A stretch of 46,754 nt of DNA from Guillardia theta CCMP2712 (Eukaryota > Protista > Cryptophyta): contig NW_005434671.1 in the NCBI RefSeq assembly GCF_000315625.1, forward strand, positions 1,242,488-1,289,241, written 5' to 3'. The notes beneath the pieces are model-generated. The model was not told where the DNA came from, searched no databases, and was given only the letters and a program-made list of their open reading frames with translations. Shown here piece by piece: positions 9,951 to 15,324 of the stretch. The translations under genes were made by a program, and so were the position numbers. Numbering within the stretch: position 1 is the stretch's first letter; every line of letters starts with the position of its first letter.

Positions 9951-10376
9951 GAGAGAAGACAAGGAGGATGGGACATGTTAGGTTGTAATAATAATGAATC
10001 AAGATGAAGAAAAAACGGATCTTCCTCTTTCTCCTTTCCTCTTCCTCCTCCTCCTCCTTCCAATTCTTGATTCCTGCGTCGTTTTCCTCCCTCCCCTCTT
10101 CCCTCCTCTTTCTTCGTTGGCTTCCTCCCTCTCCTCCCTCCTCTCTTTCAAACGCAGGAAGCACAAGCTAACGAAGCTGAGCAGCCACCGAGCTCAGTTC
10201 CACACCCTGAGCCTGCACAAGGCGAGTGAGAGGAGAGAAGAGGCAACGCGAAGAGGACAAGCAGGAGGAGCATGATGAGGATGATGATGACGATCACGAT
10301 GATGGTGATGGTGATGGTGATGATGGAGATAATGATGGAGATAGAGATGGAGATGATGATGATGATGATGGATAGG

Positions 10377-13300
10377 TCACAAGAGAGCTGTTCTCACGTC
10401 GGGAGATGAGGGAGGGCTGTTCTTCACGCGCATCACGGTTCCTCCCAGCAGGCCCTCAGTCTCCACCTCCACCGTAGCTGCTCGTCCCCGTCCGTATGCC
10501 GTCCAGTCCGACCGCGATCGCCCCCCCGCGTCACGATGGAGGAAGCGCCCTTGCCCCCGGTCAGTTTAAGACAAAGAGCAGAGAGTGGGGAGGGAGGAAG
10601 GGGAGGGGAAAGAGAGGAGAGGAGAGAGATAGTGGGGGCAGTTGAAGCAGCTGGAGCGAGAAGACAAGACGGGCGGGAGAGAAACGAGGAAAGGAAAATG
10701 CTGAAGCGAGAAGGTGAGAGGGGCGGAAGGGGATGGAGCTTTGGAGCCTCACCGTCTAGCATCTCATCAGCAAGGTCGTCGAGTTCATCCCTGTAGTCTG
10801 ATAGGCACACAAGAAGTCAGAGAGGAAGGGAGAGGCGGCCAAGAGGAGCAAAGGAGGAGAAGGAAGCGGAGGGAGGGAGGGAGGAGGCGGATGGATGGAT
10901 GGATGGATGGATGGATGGATGGATGGATGGATGGATGGATGGATGGAGGAGGAGGAGGAGGAGGAGGAGGAGAAACAAACTTGTCTTGGAGCGCTTGGCA
11001 AACGTGATGAGGTAGACGCCAGAGAAAGTGACGAGACAGCCGGAGACAAAGAAGAGCGTGTAGTGGCAGTCTGGGTTGGTAGGAGGACAATGCTGCAAGA
11101 AACATGAGCGAGAGGAGGAGTAGGAGGGAGGGGGGAAAAGGAGCAGGATAAGTTAGGAAGAAGAGAAAGGAGGAGGTGAGCAGGAAAGAAGATAGAGGGA
11201 GGAAGAGGAGAGCAGTCTTAGGAGGGAGGACGGAGGAGAGACCTGGTGGTACTCCTTGTACAGGACGATCCCAGCCATGATGGAGCAGAAGGTAAAGAGC
11301 ACGTAGTAGACTGGGACGACCTGAGGGATGGGTGGCAATCAGCAGAGAAACGGTGGGGAGGAGAAGGTGGGGAGGAGAAGGTGGGGAGGAGAAGGTGGGG
11401 AGGAGAAGGTGGGGAGGAGAAGGTGGGGAGGAGAAGGTGGGGAGGAGAAGGTGGGGAGGAGAAGGTGGGGAGGAGAAGGTGGGGAGGAGGGGGAAAAGAA
11501 GGTGGGAAATGGAGGGGACAAGCATATATCACCTCCGATGCTCCAAAATGCATCATGGCAAGATTCAAGTACTTGAGCTGTACCAAGTGTGAATGCTGTT
11601 GTTGTTCTTCCTGCTGTCAACCCTCTGCCTCCCCCCCCCCCTCTCTCTTTCTCCTCTGCTCCTGCTCCTTTCTTCTCTCGCTTTCTCTGCCATCTCGATC
11701 CTCCTACTTGTCCTCACCTGAACAATGAGTGTGCCCACGGTAACGGCAACGAGGATCCAAGGAAGGACATTGTAGAACTGCAGCGAGTGAGACAAGCGCT
11801 GATGAAAAGAAGAGGACTGCGAGGAGCGCGCAGAAGGAGAGAGACAGAGAAGAGGACGAAGAGGACGAGAAGGGAAGAGGATGGCGGGGGTGAGGGCGAA
11901 GGGGCAGGACCTGGTTGTTCCCCTGCAAGGTGAGGACAAGCGCCGTCGAGACTCCTTTGACGCACATGACAGTCAAACTCCCCTGAAGAGAACGATCAAC
12001 ATGCGCGGGAGGAGATGAAGCGAGAAGAAGAAGGGCGGAAGGACGACGGGGAGGAAGGAGGAGAGAAAGAGGAGGTGGAGGAGAAATGAATGGGAGAAGG
12101 TCGAACAGACCGTGAGAGAACAGATAAGAGTGTAGATGACGACATATCGCCTAAAGATCTTGTCAGAGAGAAGTAGAAAAGGAGAGGAAAGGAGCAAGAA
12201 AATGTCGCAAAAAGCAAGTCAGGAAAAGAATGTGGTCGGGCGGATGGATCAGAAAAGAAAAAAGAATATGGAGGAAGCAAGGAGAGGAAGAAAGAGGAAG
12301 GGAGTAAGGAGGGTAACTGGCCGTACTTCTTGATGTTGTCCGGAAGTAGGAAGAGGATCAAGATGGCGATGGAGATGGAAATAACAAAGAAGGCAAAGCC
12401 ACTGTCGCTCATGTACTCGATGAGGACCTGGAGGAGAGGACGGAAGTGACAGGACGATGCCAAGGATGGAGGAGGAAGAAGGAGTAGAGAGGAGGAGTGG
12501 AAAGTGAAGAGGAACGGGAAGGGGACAGTGATGGTGGAGGAAGAGAACGAGAAAGTGAGCTCTGAGCAGCAGGTAGAAGGAGGAAATACCTCCATGGTGA
12601 GCTGTTTGTCCGAGGAGGGAGCATAAAGGACGATAAGCACGGACCCTAAAATCGCCATGGCCACCCCAAACAAATTGCGAGGGCCTGGGATGTTGGAAAT
12701 AAGGGACGCAGCAAGGGAGAGCAGGAAATTGAAGGGGCAGGAGCTGGGCAGGACATACCGATATGTTCTCGAAGGATGTAGTGCGCAAGGATAGAGTTGG
12801 AGATAACCGACACTATGCAAGGTTTCAGATGTTTTCAAAGCTTTCCCTTGCCGCCTCTCATTCACCTGCTCCAAGAGGAGCGACGACTGTGGCCGGCGCG
12901 TAAGCATAGGCGAGGAAGTTTCCAGTCTCGCCCATGGCCATGAGGACCATGCCGACCCACCAGAGCTTAAGGCGAATGTAGGGCTGCACCAAGTCAAACA
13001 ACACTAGACAGGGTGCAGGAGGAGCAGAGCACGGAAGGGAAGACAACGGGAGGGGAAGAAGAGGGAAGGAGAGGCCAAAAAGGATAAGTTGATTGATGAT
13101 CGAGCATTACCAGCTTCCCTCCTGACAGAAGCTCGTTCTGATTGTGCGCATATTTCTGAGTATTGAGACTGACCTGTGGCAACCGTGAGGACAGGACAAA
13201 ACGTTTGAAACAGCTCACTGAAATAAGGATGTTCCCACTTAACGCCAACAAGATCCCAATTTGTTCCTGACAAGAGGAGACAAGAAACAAACGTTTACAG

Positions 13301-14046
13301 GCATAACTCCAAGATCAAAGGTCAATGACTACCTGACGAGTGAAAGCAAAACAAGTGCTGTTGGTCCCTCCACAAACCCCACAAACGTCTGTCTTCATTC
13401 CACTGTTAAACTTACCATCGCATCCCACACACTGGGCAACAAGATGTCCTAAAACAAAATTCTCAAAAATAGTCTTGATCTTTCCTTGATCATCAGTCCT
13501 CCGTTCTGCTCCTGCTCCAACTTCTACCCCAGCTCCTATGGCAGCTCCTTACCAACATTTACCTGAAGCGTTCGATGTATATGTGACACAGCGATCTTCG
13601 CTCGCGCACCAAGCGCAAGGCACGTCGACTTCTGAATCCTTCTCGCAGCTCTTCCTATCTCGTCGTAGCTCGCACAGCCCTGGAGGGCCCACGCATGCTG
13701 ACCACTTTCCGCATTCCAACTGCTGTCCTCGTTTTCCGCGCAGGCTTGTCGACTTTGATTTTCGTCGGATGGAGGAGACGGCTCTGACTCCGTCACCATC
13801 CGCATCCTCATTATGCTTTACCATGCACCATGCACACCCGCTTCTTCGCAAGCAGACTCGCTCCGTGTAGGCTTCTGTACAGGCTCCGGATCGAGCTGGC
13901 TCATAGCCCGATGATGCATGGGACATTCCACGATTTTTCGCCATGCTGGGCTGATCATCCACCATCTTCGGAACATCATGCAGTCCAGCACGAACAGCAA
14001 GCAAGAGAGGAAGCAAGAATGTAGTCCTCACCCAAAGCTTGCTCAT
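10377..14046 (-). CDS. NIPA-family Mg2+ transporter with signal peptide and Cys-rich N-terminal ectodomain (many exons; 3' end approximate)
   Basis: [24 protein letters not shown]; [55 protein letters not shown]; [11 protein letters not shown]; [39 protein letters not shown] are all NIPA signatures. Confidence 0.88.
10889..10946. repeat. (GGAT)n microsatellite in intron
   Basis: Direct reading. Confidence 0.95.
11353..11490. repeat. 14-bp tandem repeat (GTGGGGAGGAGAAG)~10 in intron
   Basis: Direct reading. Confidence 0.95.
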
Positions 14047-14469: not shown

Positions 14470-14712
14470 TAGGAGCAGGAGGAGCCAGAGGAGCCGGAGG
14501 AGCAGGAGGAGCAGGAGGAGCAGGAGGAGCAGGAGGAGCAGGAGGAGGAGCAGGAGGAGGAGCAGGAGGAGCAGGAGGAGCAGGAGGAGCAGGAGGAGCA
14601 GGAGGAGCAGGAGGAGCAGGAGGAGCAGGAGGAGCAGGAGGAGCAGGAGGAGCAAGAGGAGCAGGAGGATCAGGACGAGCAGGATGAGCAGGAGGAGCAG
14701 GAGGATCAGGAG
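14470..14712. repeat. 9-bp (AGGAGCAGG)n tandem repeat, intergenic
   Basis: Direct reading; gives spurious PPA/RSR/poly-L ORFs. Confidence 0.9.
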
Positions 14713-15324
14713 GCGACGAAGTGAAGGAGAGGGCTTGGCGGGAGCAAGAGGCCCCCGCATGGCAAATTAAGGACGTAACGGCGTGTAACGATACTTCAGC
14801 CAAAAAAAGTCTTCAAATTGGCATTAAACTATGGAAATTTTATGTTTGGAGATTTGCGTTTTTTCATCGAAGAATTAAACTCAATGATGACTATTTGAAA
14901 TAATAGCAAAACATTTTCAACCATGACAATATGGTCATTTATATTCTATCACAACTTCTATTGTTCAAGCAAGCCTGCCCCTCCCACGTGTAGCAAATGT
15001 GTTTATTGTCACACAATAACGCTGGTACAAATATATTGCATTTTAATTGATATTGCAGTTTAATTTTGACTCTGGACGCAGTTTTATTGAGAAATTAAGG
15101 TTTTTGTAGTTTATTTTATGGTGAAATTGTAGCTTCAGGGAGACAGGGGTAGTGCCCTAGCAAAGAAGGCTAACCTGGGGTGGTGTTTAGTTAATAACAG
15201 GAGGGGGTAGTCAAAGGGGGTGATGGATGGAGACAAGCAGGGGTACTTCTTGTCATGTGGTGGGGTAGTAACATGAATACCAGACTCTGGTCAAGGGTAG
15301 GGGTGGAGCGAACGAAGAGTCACG

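What the first reader, a model, noticed from the sequence alone, without database searches (positions are those of the whole stretch)
13266..14046. NIPA Mg2+ transporter fused to a receptor-like ectodomain (PSI-like CxWC repeats + ADAMTS-type Cys module)
Seen: exon 1 (14046-13563) encodes a signal peptide ([21 protein letters not shown]) and two CxxxxxCAWC-type units. It splices in phase 1 to exon 13448-13333, [39 protein letters not shown], then in phase 0 into NIPA TM1 (13266). Known: GCDG...D.CGVCGG..STC is the ADAMTS/papilin Cys-rich motif, CxWC units typify PSI domains, and typical NIPA proteins have only short N-termini. Inference: a transceptor or ligand-gated divalent-cation transporter. 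The basic RRKSK...RGKR linker could be a convertase site that sheds part of the ectodomain. The ORF track misses the ADAMTS-like exon.
Basis: partly seen in the sequence, partly recalled or inferred. Interest (0 to 1): 0.75.

Follow-up and report, generated by a model that had tools for sequence, protein, structure and literature searches.

The report
Cryptophyte NIPA transporter with Cys-rich ectodomain
This Guillardia theta gene really does encode a NIPA-type magnesium transporter carrying a secreted, disulfide-rich N-terminal domain, an undescribed architecture that every named carrier places in cryptophyte algae; what the outer domain does is still unknown.

Summary
Exons 14046-13563, 13448-13333 and 13266-13219 (minus strand) join through GT-AG introns in phases 1 and 0. 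The public protein GUITHDRAFT_160735 (Guillardia theta, "hypothetical") uses the same junctions.

The fusion is not a splicing artefact:
- A paralog on contig C34 encodes signal peptide, two CxWC units, two CGVCGG modules and NIPA helices in one uninterrupted open frame.
- Transcripts from Rhodomonas, Proteomonas, Cryptomonas and Hanusia carry the same architecture.
- All ectodomain-bearing NIPAs form one clade.

Domain calls:
- The CGVCGG exon matches only the last ~28 positions of ADAMTS_CR_3. It is a common protist four-Cys module.
- The CxWC units are PSI-like. They fall below Pfam thresholds, but the predicted fold retrieves almost only plexin, semaphorin, MET and RON PSI domains (Z about 3).
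- The NIPA core keeps all eight Mg-site residues of human NIPA2.

The ectodomain joins TM1 through a short linker whose core is conserved. TM1 is part of NIPA2's moving lid, so a regulatory or docking role is plausible but untested. The proposed convertase site is not conserved. The public model skips a conserved 63-nt exon (13173-13111).

Verdict: a new variant of a known kind, of moderate interest.

The parts
13563..14046 (-). Exon 1: start codon, signal peptide (about residues 1-20), a clade-conserved acidic N-terminal motif, PSI-like unit 1, a non-conserved basic linker and PSI-like unit 2. It ends in phase 1.
   Evidence: Translation. Pfam PSI_integrin E 0.0034 and PSI E 0.01, both under the cut-offs. 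Eleven invariant Cys across five references. Unit 2 is fold-matched to PSI domains. The linker has pLDDT below 50.
13333..13448 (-). Exon 2: the last Cys of unit 2, one four-Cys CGVCGG module and the FAFTRQ linker. Phase 1 in, phase 0 out.
   Evidence: Translation. Pfam ADAMTS_CR_3 E 1.9e-4, 21.9 bits, profile positions 88-115 of 115. The family profile hits ADAMTS5 9rwm at E 7.7e-5 and ADAMTS13 at about 0.004.
13219..13266 (-). Exon 3: end of the linker and the first half of NIPA TM1.
   Evidence: tblastn to the paralog. Splice sites.
13111..13173 (-). Exon 4: 63 nt encoding the conserved SLNxQKYxHN stretch (end of TM1 and the TM1-2 hairpin). The public model P0030 omits it.
   Evidence: tblastn. 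P0030 has a gap in alignment A1 where all orthologs have this stretch. GT-AG, phase 0.
12866..12983 (-). Exon 5: TM2-TM3, with the GETGNF and PLGA motifs (Mg-site residues equivalent to E70, N73 and G89).
   Evidence: Pfam Mg_trans_NIPA E 5.8e-13. Alignment to NIPA2.
12759..12812 (-). Exon 6 (NIPA TM3-4 region).
12590..12684 (-). Exon 7 (NIPA TM4 and the start of the 4-5 loop).
12327..12427 (-). Exon 8 (4-5 loop and TM5).
12111..12150 (-). Exon 9.
11911..11982 (-). Exon 10 (TM6, with T in place of S192 and the equivalent of K197).
11718..11777 (-). Exon 11 (TM7, equivalent of Q232).
11533..11577 (-). Exon 12.
11243..11320 (-). Exon 13 (TM8, VPVYYVLFT, equivalents of Y252, Y253 and F256).
10981..11092 (-). 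Exon 14 (8-9 loop with a conserved CPxxxxxC, and TM9).
10753..10797 (-). Exon 15 (acidic cytosolic tail).
   Evidence: Shared with P0030.
10398..10477 (-). Exon 16: tail with the conserved ETEGLL acidic di-leucine motif. The acceptor is chosen to fit the orthologs. The public model starts this exon further upstream and adds about 22 residues.
   Evidence: The acceptor choice is an inference from orthologs P0028 and P0042.
10168..10212 (-). Exon 17: last 14 codons and the stop, as in the public model.

Best explanation
Shown:
- The gene (G. theta GUITHDRAFT_160735; my model has 17 exons and 551 aa) belongs to a NIPA subfamily of the DMT superfamily. Every named carrier of this subfamily is a cryptophyte.
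- Its members carry, in one polypeptide, a signal peptide and a 110-196-aa ectodomain with an even Cys count in 12 of 13 members tabulated (23 in one), N-glycosylation sequons, and a fixed domain order.
- That order is two six-Cys PSI-like units, then zero to two four-Cys CGVCGG knots. The knots are homologous to the C-terminal tip of the ADAMTS Cys-rich domain.
- The ectodomain joins TM1 through a short linker, 8-17 residues from the last Cys, whose core (aromatic-T-x-x-E/Q) is conserved.
- The transporter core keeps every Mg2+-site residue defined in human NIPA2.

Inferred:
- It works as a NIPA-type passive carrier of Mg2+, and perhaps of nucleotides as NIPA2 does. Its location would be the plasma membrane or a post-Golgi membrane. 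This reading rests on the conserved cytosolic E-x-E-G-L-L acidic di-leucine signal and on an oxidised, glycosylated N-terminus facing outside or into the lumen.
- NIPA2's N-terminus is extracellular, and helices 1-3 form the hinged lid over its cavity. The ectodomain therefore sits directly on the moving gate.
- The ectodomain most likely acts as a built-in accessory module. It would dock an external or luminal partner, or the transporter's own outer face, and so position or modulate lid opening. The partner is unknown.

The confidence of 0.5 is for the whole statement. The architecture alone is about 0.95. NIPA-type transport competence is about 0.75. The accessory or regulatory role of the ectodomain is about 0.4.
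For: Architecture:
- Splice phases and GT-AG sites.
- The public model uses the same junctions.
- The single-ORF paralog L001 has NIPA at 3e-67.
- Intronless contigs L012 and L014 and the Cryptomonas transcript L013.
- Transcriptome orthologs, with taxa checked.
- Only two copies of the PSI-like pair exist in the genome, both 5' of a NIPA.
- One clade holds all ectodomain-bearing NIPAs, SH-aLRT 93.
- The pair profile finds only 30 proteins among 1.84 billion. Those I scanned or read are N-terminal pieces or members of this family, apart from six tandem-repeat proteins.

Modules:
- CGVCGG module.
- PSI-like fold: 12 of 13 Foldseek rows, and 14 of the 17 chains with Z >= 2 out of 48,161 compared, are PSI-bearing proteins, aligned at the stretch just C-terminal of the Sema domain or in an entry titled PSI2.

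Transporter competence:
- NIPA2 hit at 1e-42, with E70, N73, G89, S92, Q232, Y252, Y253 and F256 conserved and S192 replaced by T. Residue roles come from PMC13500462.

Topology and lid:
- PMC13500462.

Other features:
- Even Cys counts in 12 of 13 members, sequons and linker.
- ExEGLL conserved in all eight rows of alignment A1 that have a C-terminal tail.
Against: - There is no expression, localisation or transport data for this protein.
- AF2 confidence for the ectodomain is only about 63-65. Unit 1 is poorly modelled.
- The ectodomain diverges much faster than the core, at about 30-40% against about 70% identity.
- It varies in module number: P0033 has no CGVCGG module, P0027 has a degenerate one, and the window gene has one where most have two. 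That fits a tolerant spacer as well as a specific sensor.
- NIPA2's helix-1 glycine hinge (G25, G26) is S-V here, so lid mechanics may differ.
- No docking geometry could be examined, because the tools return no coordinates or PAE.
Confidence: 0.5

Rival explanations
1. The ectodomain is only a structural or trafficking appendage. It would be a glycosylated, disulfide-locked cap that helps folding, ER exit, dimer stability or protease resistance. It would have no ligand and no effect on gating.
For: - Module number varies between orthologs, and sequence diverges fast while only the Cys scaffold is kept.
- CGVCGG repeats elsewhere look like generic stalk repeats, for example after the VWA domain of the integrin-beta-like P0005. 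They occur in at least 24 places in G. theta.
Against: - The linker to TM1 is short and holds an invariant Thr.
- Motifs between the units (CxxWxxCxGPxxLCELR) are conserved.
- The architecture is retained across at least five named cryptophyte genera and in two ancient paralog clades.
Confidence: 0.3
2. One reading: a transceptor, or a transporter whose ectodomain is shed by a furin/kexin-type convertase at the RRKSK...RGKR linker.
For: The window protein has an R-G-K-R motif in a linker that AF2 predicts to be disordered.
Against: - The basic stretch is absent from Hanusia phi P0075 (69% identical) and from all other orthologs, whose linkers differ in length and charge.
- The cytosolic tail carries only short sorting-type motifs and no signalling domain.
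Confidence: 0.07
3. The signal peptide plus the following segment is a bipartite plastid or periplastid targeting signal, so the protein is a Mg2+ carrier of the complex plastid envelope.
For: - Cryptophyte plastid proteins start with a signal peptide, and plastids have a high Mg2+ demand (general knowledge, not tested here).
- About 35 residues lie between the signal peptide and the first Cys.
Against: - The post-signal segment is acidic. Its K-x-x-x-M-V-D-D-type motif is conserved in the window's clade, unlike transit peptides.
- The first residue after the likely cleavage site is not Phe.
- Sixteen Cys in an even, conserved framework, plus sequons, point to an oxidising, glycosylating compartment.
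- The ortholog is kept in the non-photosynthetic Cryptomonas paramaecium.
- The tail has an acidic di-leucine motif typical of post-Golgi sorting.
Confidence: 0.07
4. Gene-model artefact: the Cys-rich exons belong to a separate upstream secreted-protein gene.
For: The window gene itself has introns between the modules, and I have no RNA data for G. theta.
Against: - The same order of modules sits in single uninterrupted ORFs (L001, L012, L014) and in assembled transcripts of other cryptophytes.
- Exon 2 ends in the conserved FT-x-x-E/Q linker that continues directly into TM1.
Confidence: 0.02

Closest known systems
Human NIPA2 and the NIPA/NIPAL family (Pfam PF05653; PDB 9Z6N, 9Z7R, 9Z7S, 9Z7T; PMC13500462)
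   Same: - The homologous core aligns at E 1e-42 over NIPA2 residues 52-276, and exons 3-4 supply TM1.
- All eight invariant Mg2+-site residues are conserved.
- The N-out/C-in topology of NIPA2 is compatible with a signal peptide plus an ectodomain.
   Different: - NIPA2 has only about 11 residues before TM1. This family has a signal peptide and a 110-196-aa disulfide-rich ectodomain.
- The helix-1 glycine hinge (G25, G26) and the acidic 4-5-loop patch (E133-E135) are not conserved (S-V and S-D-K here).
- The tail has an ExEGLL motif.
PSI (plexin-semaphorin-integrin) domains, PF01437 / PF17205
   Same: - The C...C...C-x-W-C...C core is shared.
- The predicted fold of unit 2 superposes on the PSI domains of RON, plexin A2/A4/C1, Sema4D and MET over 32-37 residues, at Z 2.3-3.2.
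- PSI is also N-terminal in the protist integrin-beta-like P0005, which additionally has CGVCGG repeats.
   Different: - There are six rather than eight Cys per unit.
- Pfam scores are below the gathering thresholds (17.6 against 27, and 16.6 against 23.1).
- The family profile has no PDB sequence hit.
- Only about two thirds of a PSI domain is matched.
C-terminal tip of the ADAMTS/papilin Cys-rich domain (PF19236 ADAMTS_CR_3, positions about 88-115; ADAMTS5 9RWM, ADAMTS13 3GHM)
   Same: GCD-x(n)-D-x-C-G-V-C-G-G-x-N-S-x-C motif with four Cys. The family profile gives E 7.7e-5 to ADAMTS5 and about 0.004 to ADAMTS13.
   Different: - Only the last ~28 of 115 positions are present, with no TSR, spacer or protease context.
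- Here the module is a free-standing, often tandemly repeated protist unit (P0002, P0004, P0008, P0015, P0005), found in at least 24 places in G. theta.
Transporters that depend on a single-pass glycoprotein partner (for example MCT with basigin/embigin, LAT1 with 4F2hc). This is an analogy from general knowledge.
   Same: An extracellular glycosylated, disulfide-bonded domain sits next to a solute carrier and governs its trafficking or activity.
   Different: Those are separate subunits with Ig or glycosidase-like folds. Here the ectodomain is fused in cis to TM1 and has PSI-like and CGVCGG modules. There is no functional evidence here.

Membership tests
NIPA Mg2+ transporter (PF05653, DMT superfamily) | Significant match to the family profile above the gathering score | tested here: met
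   Exon 5 alone: E 5.8e-13, 49.1 bits against a cut-off of 26.2. P0030: 2.7e-66. Six-frame hits along the locus.
NIPA Mg2+ transporter (PF05653, DMT superfamily) | Conserved ion-coordinating residues of NIPA2 (E70, N73, G89, S92, Q232, Y252, Y253, F256) | tested here: met
   All eight are identical in the P0030-NIPA2 alignment, and S192 is replaced by T. Residue list from PMC13500462.
NIPA Mg2+ transporter (PF05653, DMT superfamily) | Nine TM helices with N-out/C-in topology | tested here: inconclusive
   The alignment covers NIPA2 residues 52-276, exons 3-4 supply TM1, and AF2 models TM1 as a helix. No topology predictor or experiment was available. A signal peptide plus a Cys-rich N-terminus is consistent with N-out.
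NIPA Mg2+ transporter (PF05653, DMT superfamily) | Mg2+ transport activity | not testable with these tools
   Needs a liposome flux or complementation assay.
PSI domain (PF01437 / PF17205) | Profile score at or above the Pfam gathering threshold | tested here: not met
   PSI_integrin 17.6 bits (cut-off 27) and PSI 16.6 bits (cut-off 23.1). Orthologs are no better.
PSI domain (PF01437 / PF17205) | Eight-Cys framework including C-x2-C before the C-x-W-C | tested here: not met
   Each unit has six conserved Cys, and the C-x2-C pair is absent.
PSI domain (PF01437 / PF17205) | PSI fold | tested here: inconclusive
   Unit 2: VIA Z 2.3-3.2, 32-37 residues, rmsd 1.7-3.2 A. Fourteen of the 17 chains with Z >= 2 are PSI-bearing proteins. 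Foldseek E >= 1, but 12 of 13 rows are plexins or semaphorins. The model has pLDDT 73-84 there. Unit 1 is too poorly modelled to test.
ADAMTS Cys-rich domain (PF19236 ADAMTS_CR_3) | Match over the whole 115-position domain above the cut-off | tested here: not met
   Only positions 88-115 match. The score is 21.9 bits for the exon alone (cut-off 21) but 14.7 bits within P0030.
ADAMTS Cys-rich domain (PF19236 ADAMTS_CR_3) | Homology of the GCD...CGVCGG..S.C knot to solved ADAMTS proteins | tested here: met
   Family profile A1 hits ADAMTS5 9rwm_A at E 7.7e-5, and ADAMTS13 3vn4, 3ghm and 6qig at E 0.0035-0.0066, all at that motif.
Protist CGVCGG tandem-repeat module (no Pfam family of its own) | A unit of about 25-30 aa, C-x-G-C-D-G-x(n)-D-x-C-G-V-C-G-G, found in secreted or surface proteins | tested here: met
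   The ectodomain aligns at 41-51% identity with the repeats of P0005. Hits P0002, P0004, P0008 and P0015 are arrays of it. It occurs in at least 24 places in G. theta.
Furin/kexin convertase substrate | R-x-K/R-R site conserved among orthologs | tested here: not met
   RGKR is present only in the window protein. It is absent from Hanusia phi P0075 and from all other orthologs.

The most novel reading that the evidence does not exclude
The fused PSI-like/CGVCGG ectodomain is a true sensor. It would bind an external ligand, or respond to redox change through its CxWC pairs, and move TM1. That would gate a NIPA Mg2+ (or nucleotide) carrier. It would be the first DMT-superfamily transporter with a built-in receptor ectodomain, and a natural handle for studying NIPA gating.
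Probability: 0.12. Interest if true: 0.75.

Novelty: new variant of a known kind. Interest (0 to 1): 0.45.

Why it matters
NIPA transporters are medically relevant (NIPA1/SPG6, NIPA2 epilepsy, NIPAL4 ichthyosis), yet how they are regulated is unknown. In the first NIPA2 structures (2026), the N-terminus is extracellular and helices 1-3 form the moving lid.

Cryptophytes have attached a folded, disulfide-rich domain to exactly that helix. The attachment has survived in two ancient paralog clades and at least five named genera. That makes this family a natural experiment on whether the outer face of TM1 can control NIPA transport.

The finding also documents that PSI-like and ADAMTS-CR-like mini-modules are reused as extracellular building blocks in protists. 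In addition, it corrects the public gene model, which omits a conserved exon.

Tried and rejected
- phmmer of exon 1 against PDB sequences: no hit.
- Profile of the PSI-like pair against PDB sequences: no hit at E <= 10.
- VIA second look at the Foldseek hits for the 243-aa ectodomain model: no Z >= 2. The whole-model normalisation swamps a 35-residue domain. The smaller model gave the PSI hits.
- ESM Atlas by features: no usable hit.
- The search of earlier findings by place and by words: empty.
- Literature searches for NIPA with cryptophytes, for the CGVCGG motif or the locus tag, and for Guillardia with ADAMTS or PSI found nothing relevant.
- I looked for the Cys modules next to the other G. 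theta NIPA paralogs (L002-L008). There were none within about 1.5 kb.
- An extra hidden CGVCGG exon in the window gene is rejected. Exon 2 encodes one complete module contiguously, so the single module is real.
- My first 16-exon ending (stop at 10377) is replaced by a 17-exon model, because the last public exon matches the orthologs better.
- I sent no joined translation of my own spliced model to any tool. Exons were searched one by one by reference. The database protein P0030 and the single-exon paralog L001 served as full-length proxies.
Full report
**What is in the window**

On the minus strand, 14046-13563 opens with ATG and encodes 161 residues. These comprise a hydrophobic signal-like N-terminus and two units of the form C-x8-C-x5..9-C-x-W-C-x5-C, separated by a basic linker.

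After a 114-nt GT-AG intron, 13448-13333 encodes one CVGCDG-x-CGVCGG-x-STC module. After a 66-nt intron, 13266-13219 starts NIPA helix 1. The phases are 0->1->0->0 with canonical splice sites.

**Organism and public model**

The genome is 87.1 Mb in 669 contigs. The word search returned P0030, [quoted passage not shown], 554 aa. It is carried on a contig of 1,289,241 bp, the coordinate at which the window's stretch of C3 ends.

Three literature searches found nothing on it.

**Is the fusion real?**

Yes. Four lines of evidence agree:
- A six-frame search of the genome with PF05653 found a paralog on contig C34 (L001). A single open frame there holds signal peptide, two CxWC units, two CGVCGG modules and NIPA positions 4-252 (NIPA E 3e-67).
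- Environmental contigs L012 and L014 carry intronless 598- and 594-aa versions. L013 is a Cryptomonas paramaecium transcript.
- Transcriptome proteins from Rhodomonas abbreviata, R. lens, Proteomonas sulcata and Hanusia phi show the same order of modules (taxa).
- In G. theta the PSI-like pair occurs only twice, each time 5' of a NIPA. Other NIPA paralogs lack it.

A maximum-likelihood tree of NIPA cores supports a single origin. It used 36 rows and left out fragments lacking the GE..NF or VPVYYV-type motif. It puts all ectodomain-bearing sequences in one clade (SH-aLRT 93). The subclades are the C34 type (99) and the window type (97).

**Gene model**

Guided by the paralog and orthologs, I derive 17 exons, 1,656 nt and 551 codons. 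All sites are GT-AG and no exon contains a stop.

The public model skips exon 4 (13173-13111). That exon encodes the SLNxQKYxHN stretch present in every ortholog. The public model also uses an upstream acceptor for exon 16 that inserts about 22 residues absent from orthologs P0028 and P0042.

Exons were searched by reference, and P0030 and L001 served as full-length proxies.

**The CGVCGG module**

Exon 2 alone hits Pfam ADAMTS_CR_3 at E 1.9e-4, but only at profile positions 88-115 of 115. Inside the whole protein the score falls below the cut-off.

A profile of the family hits solved ADAMTS5 (E 7.7e-5) and ADAMTS13 (about 0.004) at that same motif. Homology to the terminal four-Cys knot of the ADAMTS Cys-rich domain is therefore supported. 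Membership of the full domain is not.

The module is a free-standing protist repeat. Arrays of it occur in P0002, P0004, P0008 and P0015. In P0005 they follow a genuine PSI and an integrin-beta VWA domain. It occurs in at least 24 places in G. theta.

Most orthologs have two modules. The window gene has one complete module, P0027 has a degenerate one, and the Cryptomonas protein has none.

**The CxWC units**

By sequence the case for PSI is weak:
- Pfam gives PSI_integrin E 0.0034 and PSI E 0.01, both below threshold.
- The pair profile finds nothing among PDB sequences.
- Each unit has six conserved Cys rather than eight.

Fold evidence is weak in score but specific in content. AF2 models have pLDDT 63-65 overall and 73-84 for unit 2. 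Foldseek returns only E >= 1, yet 12 of 13 rows for the small model are plexins or semaphorins.

An exhaustive VIA comparison with 48,161 chains found 17 with Z >= 2. Fourteen of these are RON, plexin, semaphorin or MET chains, with Z 2.3-3.2 over 32-37 residues. They align at the stretch just C-terminal of the Sema domain or, for 5l74, in an entry titled PSI2-IPT2. I call the units PSI-like, not PSI members. Unit 1 is too poorly modelled to test.

The pair profile finds only 30 proteins at E <= 1e-3 among 1.84 billion representatives. Those I scanned or read are N-terminal fragments or members of this NIPA family, or match only unit 1 many times. The latter are six tandem six-Cys repeat proteins, for example one from Chlamydomonas sp. 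UWO 241.

**The transporter**

P0030 aligns to human NIPA2 (PDB 9Z7S, 9Z6N) at E 1e-42. The residues E70, N73, G89, S92, Q232, Y252, Y253 and F256 are conserved, and S192 is replaced by T. The NIPA2 paper shows that these residues coordinate two hydrated Mg2+ ions and are needed for flux (PMC13500462).

The same paper reports a dimer of nine-helix protomers, an extracellular N-terminus and passive transport of Mg2+ and nucleotides. Helices 1-3 act as a hinged lid (abstract; structure section).

**Mechanistic reading (inference)**

Several features place the N-terminal domain in an oxidising, glycosylating compartment, that is, outside the cell or in a lumen:
- a signal peptide;
- an even Cys count in 12 of the 13 members tabulated (16 in the window protein, 12-24 in eleven others, 23 in P0035);
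- 2-6 N-glycosylation sequons.

This matches NIPA2's N-out topology.

The stretch from the last Cys to TM1 is only 8-17 residues. It holds a conserved aromatic-T-x-x-E/Q core with an invariant Thr. The ectodomain therefore rides on the lid helix.

The cytosolic tail has E-[RT]-E-[GA]-L-L in all eight rows of alignment A1 that reach it. By general knowledge this fits the [DE]xxxL[LI] adaptor-binding signal, which suggests plasma-membrane or endosomal cycling. The C34 clade also ends in S-E-L-COOH.

I therefore favour a working NIPA carrier whose fused ectodomain is a cis accessory module that docks a partner or modulates the lid. A purely structural or trafficking role is the main rival.

Other readings fare worse:
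- The proposed convertase site lies in a disordered, non-conserved linker. It is absent even from Hanusia phi.
- A plastid-targeting reading is disfavoured by the acidic post-signal segment, the disulfide-rich domain and retention in the non-photosynthetic Cryptomonas paramaecium.

**Limits**

- There are no expression, localisation or flux data.
- Most homologs are unnamed environmental sequences. "Cryptophyte-specific" therefore means only that every named carrier is a cryptophyte.
- The tools return neither model coordinates nor PAE, so contacts between the ectodomain and the transporter could not be examined.

Noticed in passing
window 13111-13173 (-): The public protein GUITHDRAFT_160735 (P0030) skips this in-frame 63-nt exon, which encodes the SLNxQKYxHN stretch conserved in all orthologs. 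It also has about 22 extra residues before ETEGLL, from an upstream acceptor. This is probably an annotation error rather than an isoform.
   Followed up: yes
window 11352-11489, 10889-10972, 14471-14713: Perfect microsatellite-like arrays: a 14-nt unit x 9.9 inside intron 12, (GGAT)n and (GGA)n in intron 14, and a 9-nt unit x 27 just upstream of the gene. The last one gives long fake PAPPAPP / LLLL / RRS ORFs in the ORF list.
   Followed up: partly
P0053 (686 aa, environmental): A NIPA protein with a different N-terminal extension of about 220 aa (10 Cys, no Pfam hit) ahead of TM1. It suggests that ectodomain additions to NIPA TM1 happened more than once in protists.
   Followed up: partly
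L014:3001-4785 (8.5-kb JGI metagenome contig): An intronless 594-aa full-length fusion gene sits among several small unannotated ORFs. The origin of the contig (intron-poor cryptophyte or something else) was not examined.
   Followed up: no
G000 contigs C131:87196-92620, C26:15286-15840, C44:180741-181466, C7:722392, C53:393723: Clusters of CGVCGG modules lie inside very long open frames (up to 5,133 aa on C44). G. theta appears to have large surface or secreted proteins built from this repeat.
   Followed up: no
P0077 (Chlamydomonas sp. UWO 241, KAG1655584.1), P0078, P0079, P0085, P0090: These proteins are made of 4-15 tandem copies of a six-Cys unit of about 60-70 aa (C-x8-C-x5-C-x-W-C ... 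LPxxxFxC) that matches unit 1 of the NIPA ectodomain. No Pfam PSI hit was returned at E <= 0.01, so this may be an unnamed repeat family.
   Followed up: partly
P0005 (860 aa, environmental): An integrin-beta-like protein with an N-terminal PSI-type motif, Integrin_beta VWA and SIB-type vWA domains, followed by about ten CGVCGG repeats where animal integrins have I-EGF repeats.
   Followed up: partly
C-termini of P0001, P0003, P0018, P0020-P0023: The C34-type clade ends in a conserved hydrophobic-x-S-E-L-COOH. This resembles a class I PDZ-ligand or sorting signal. The window-type clade lacks it.
   Followed up: no
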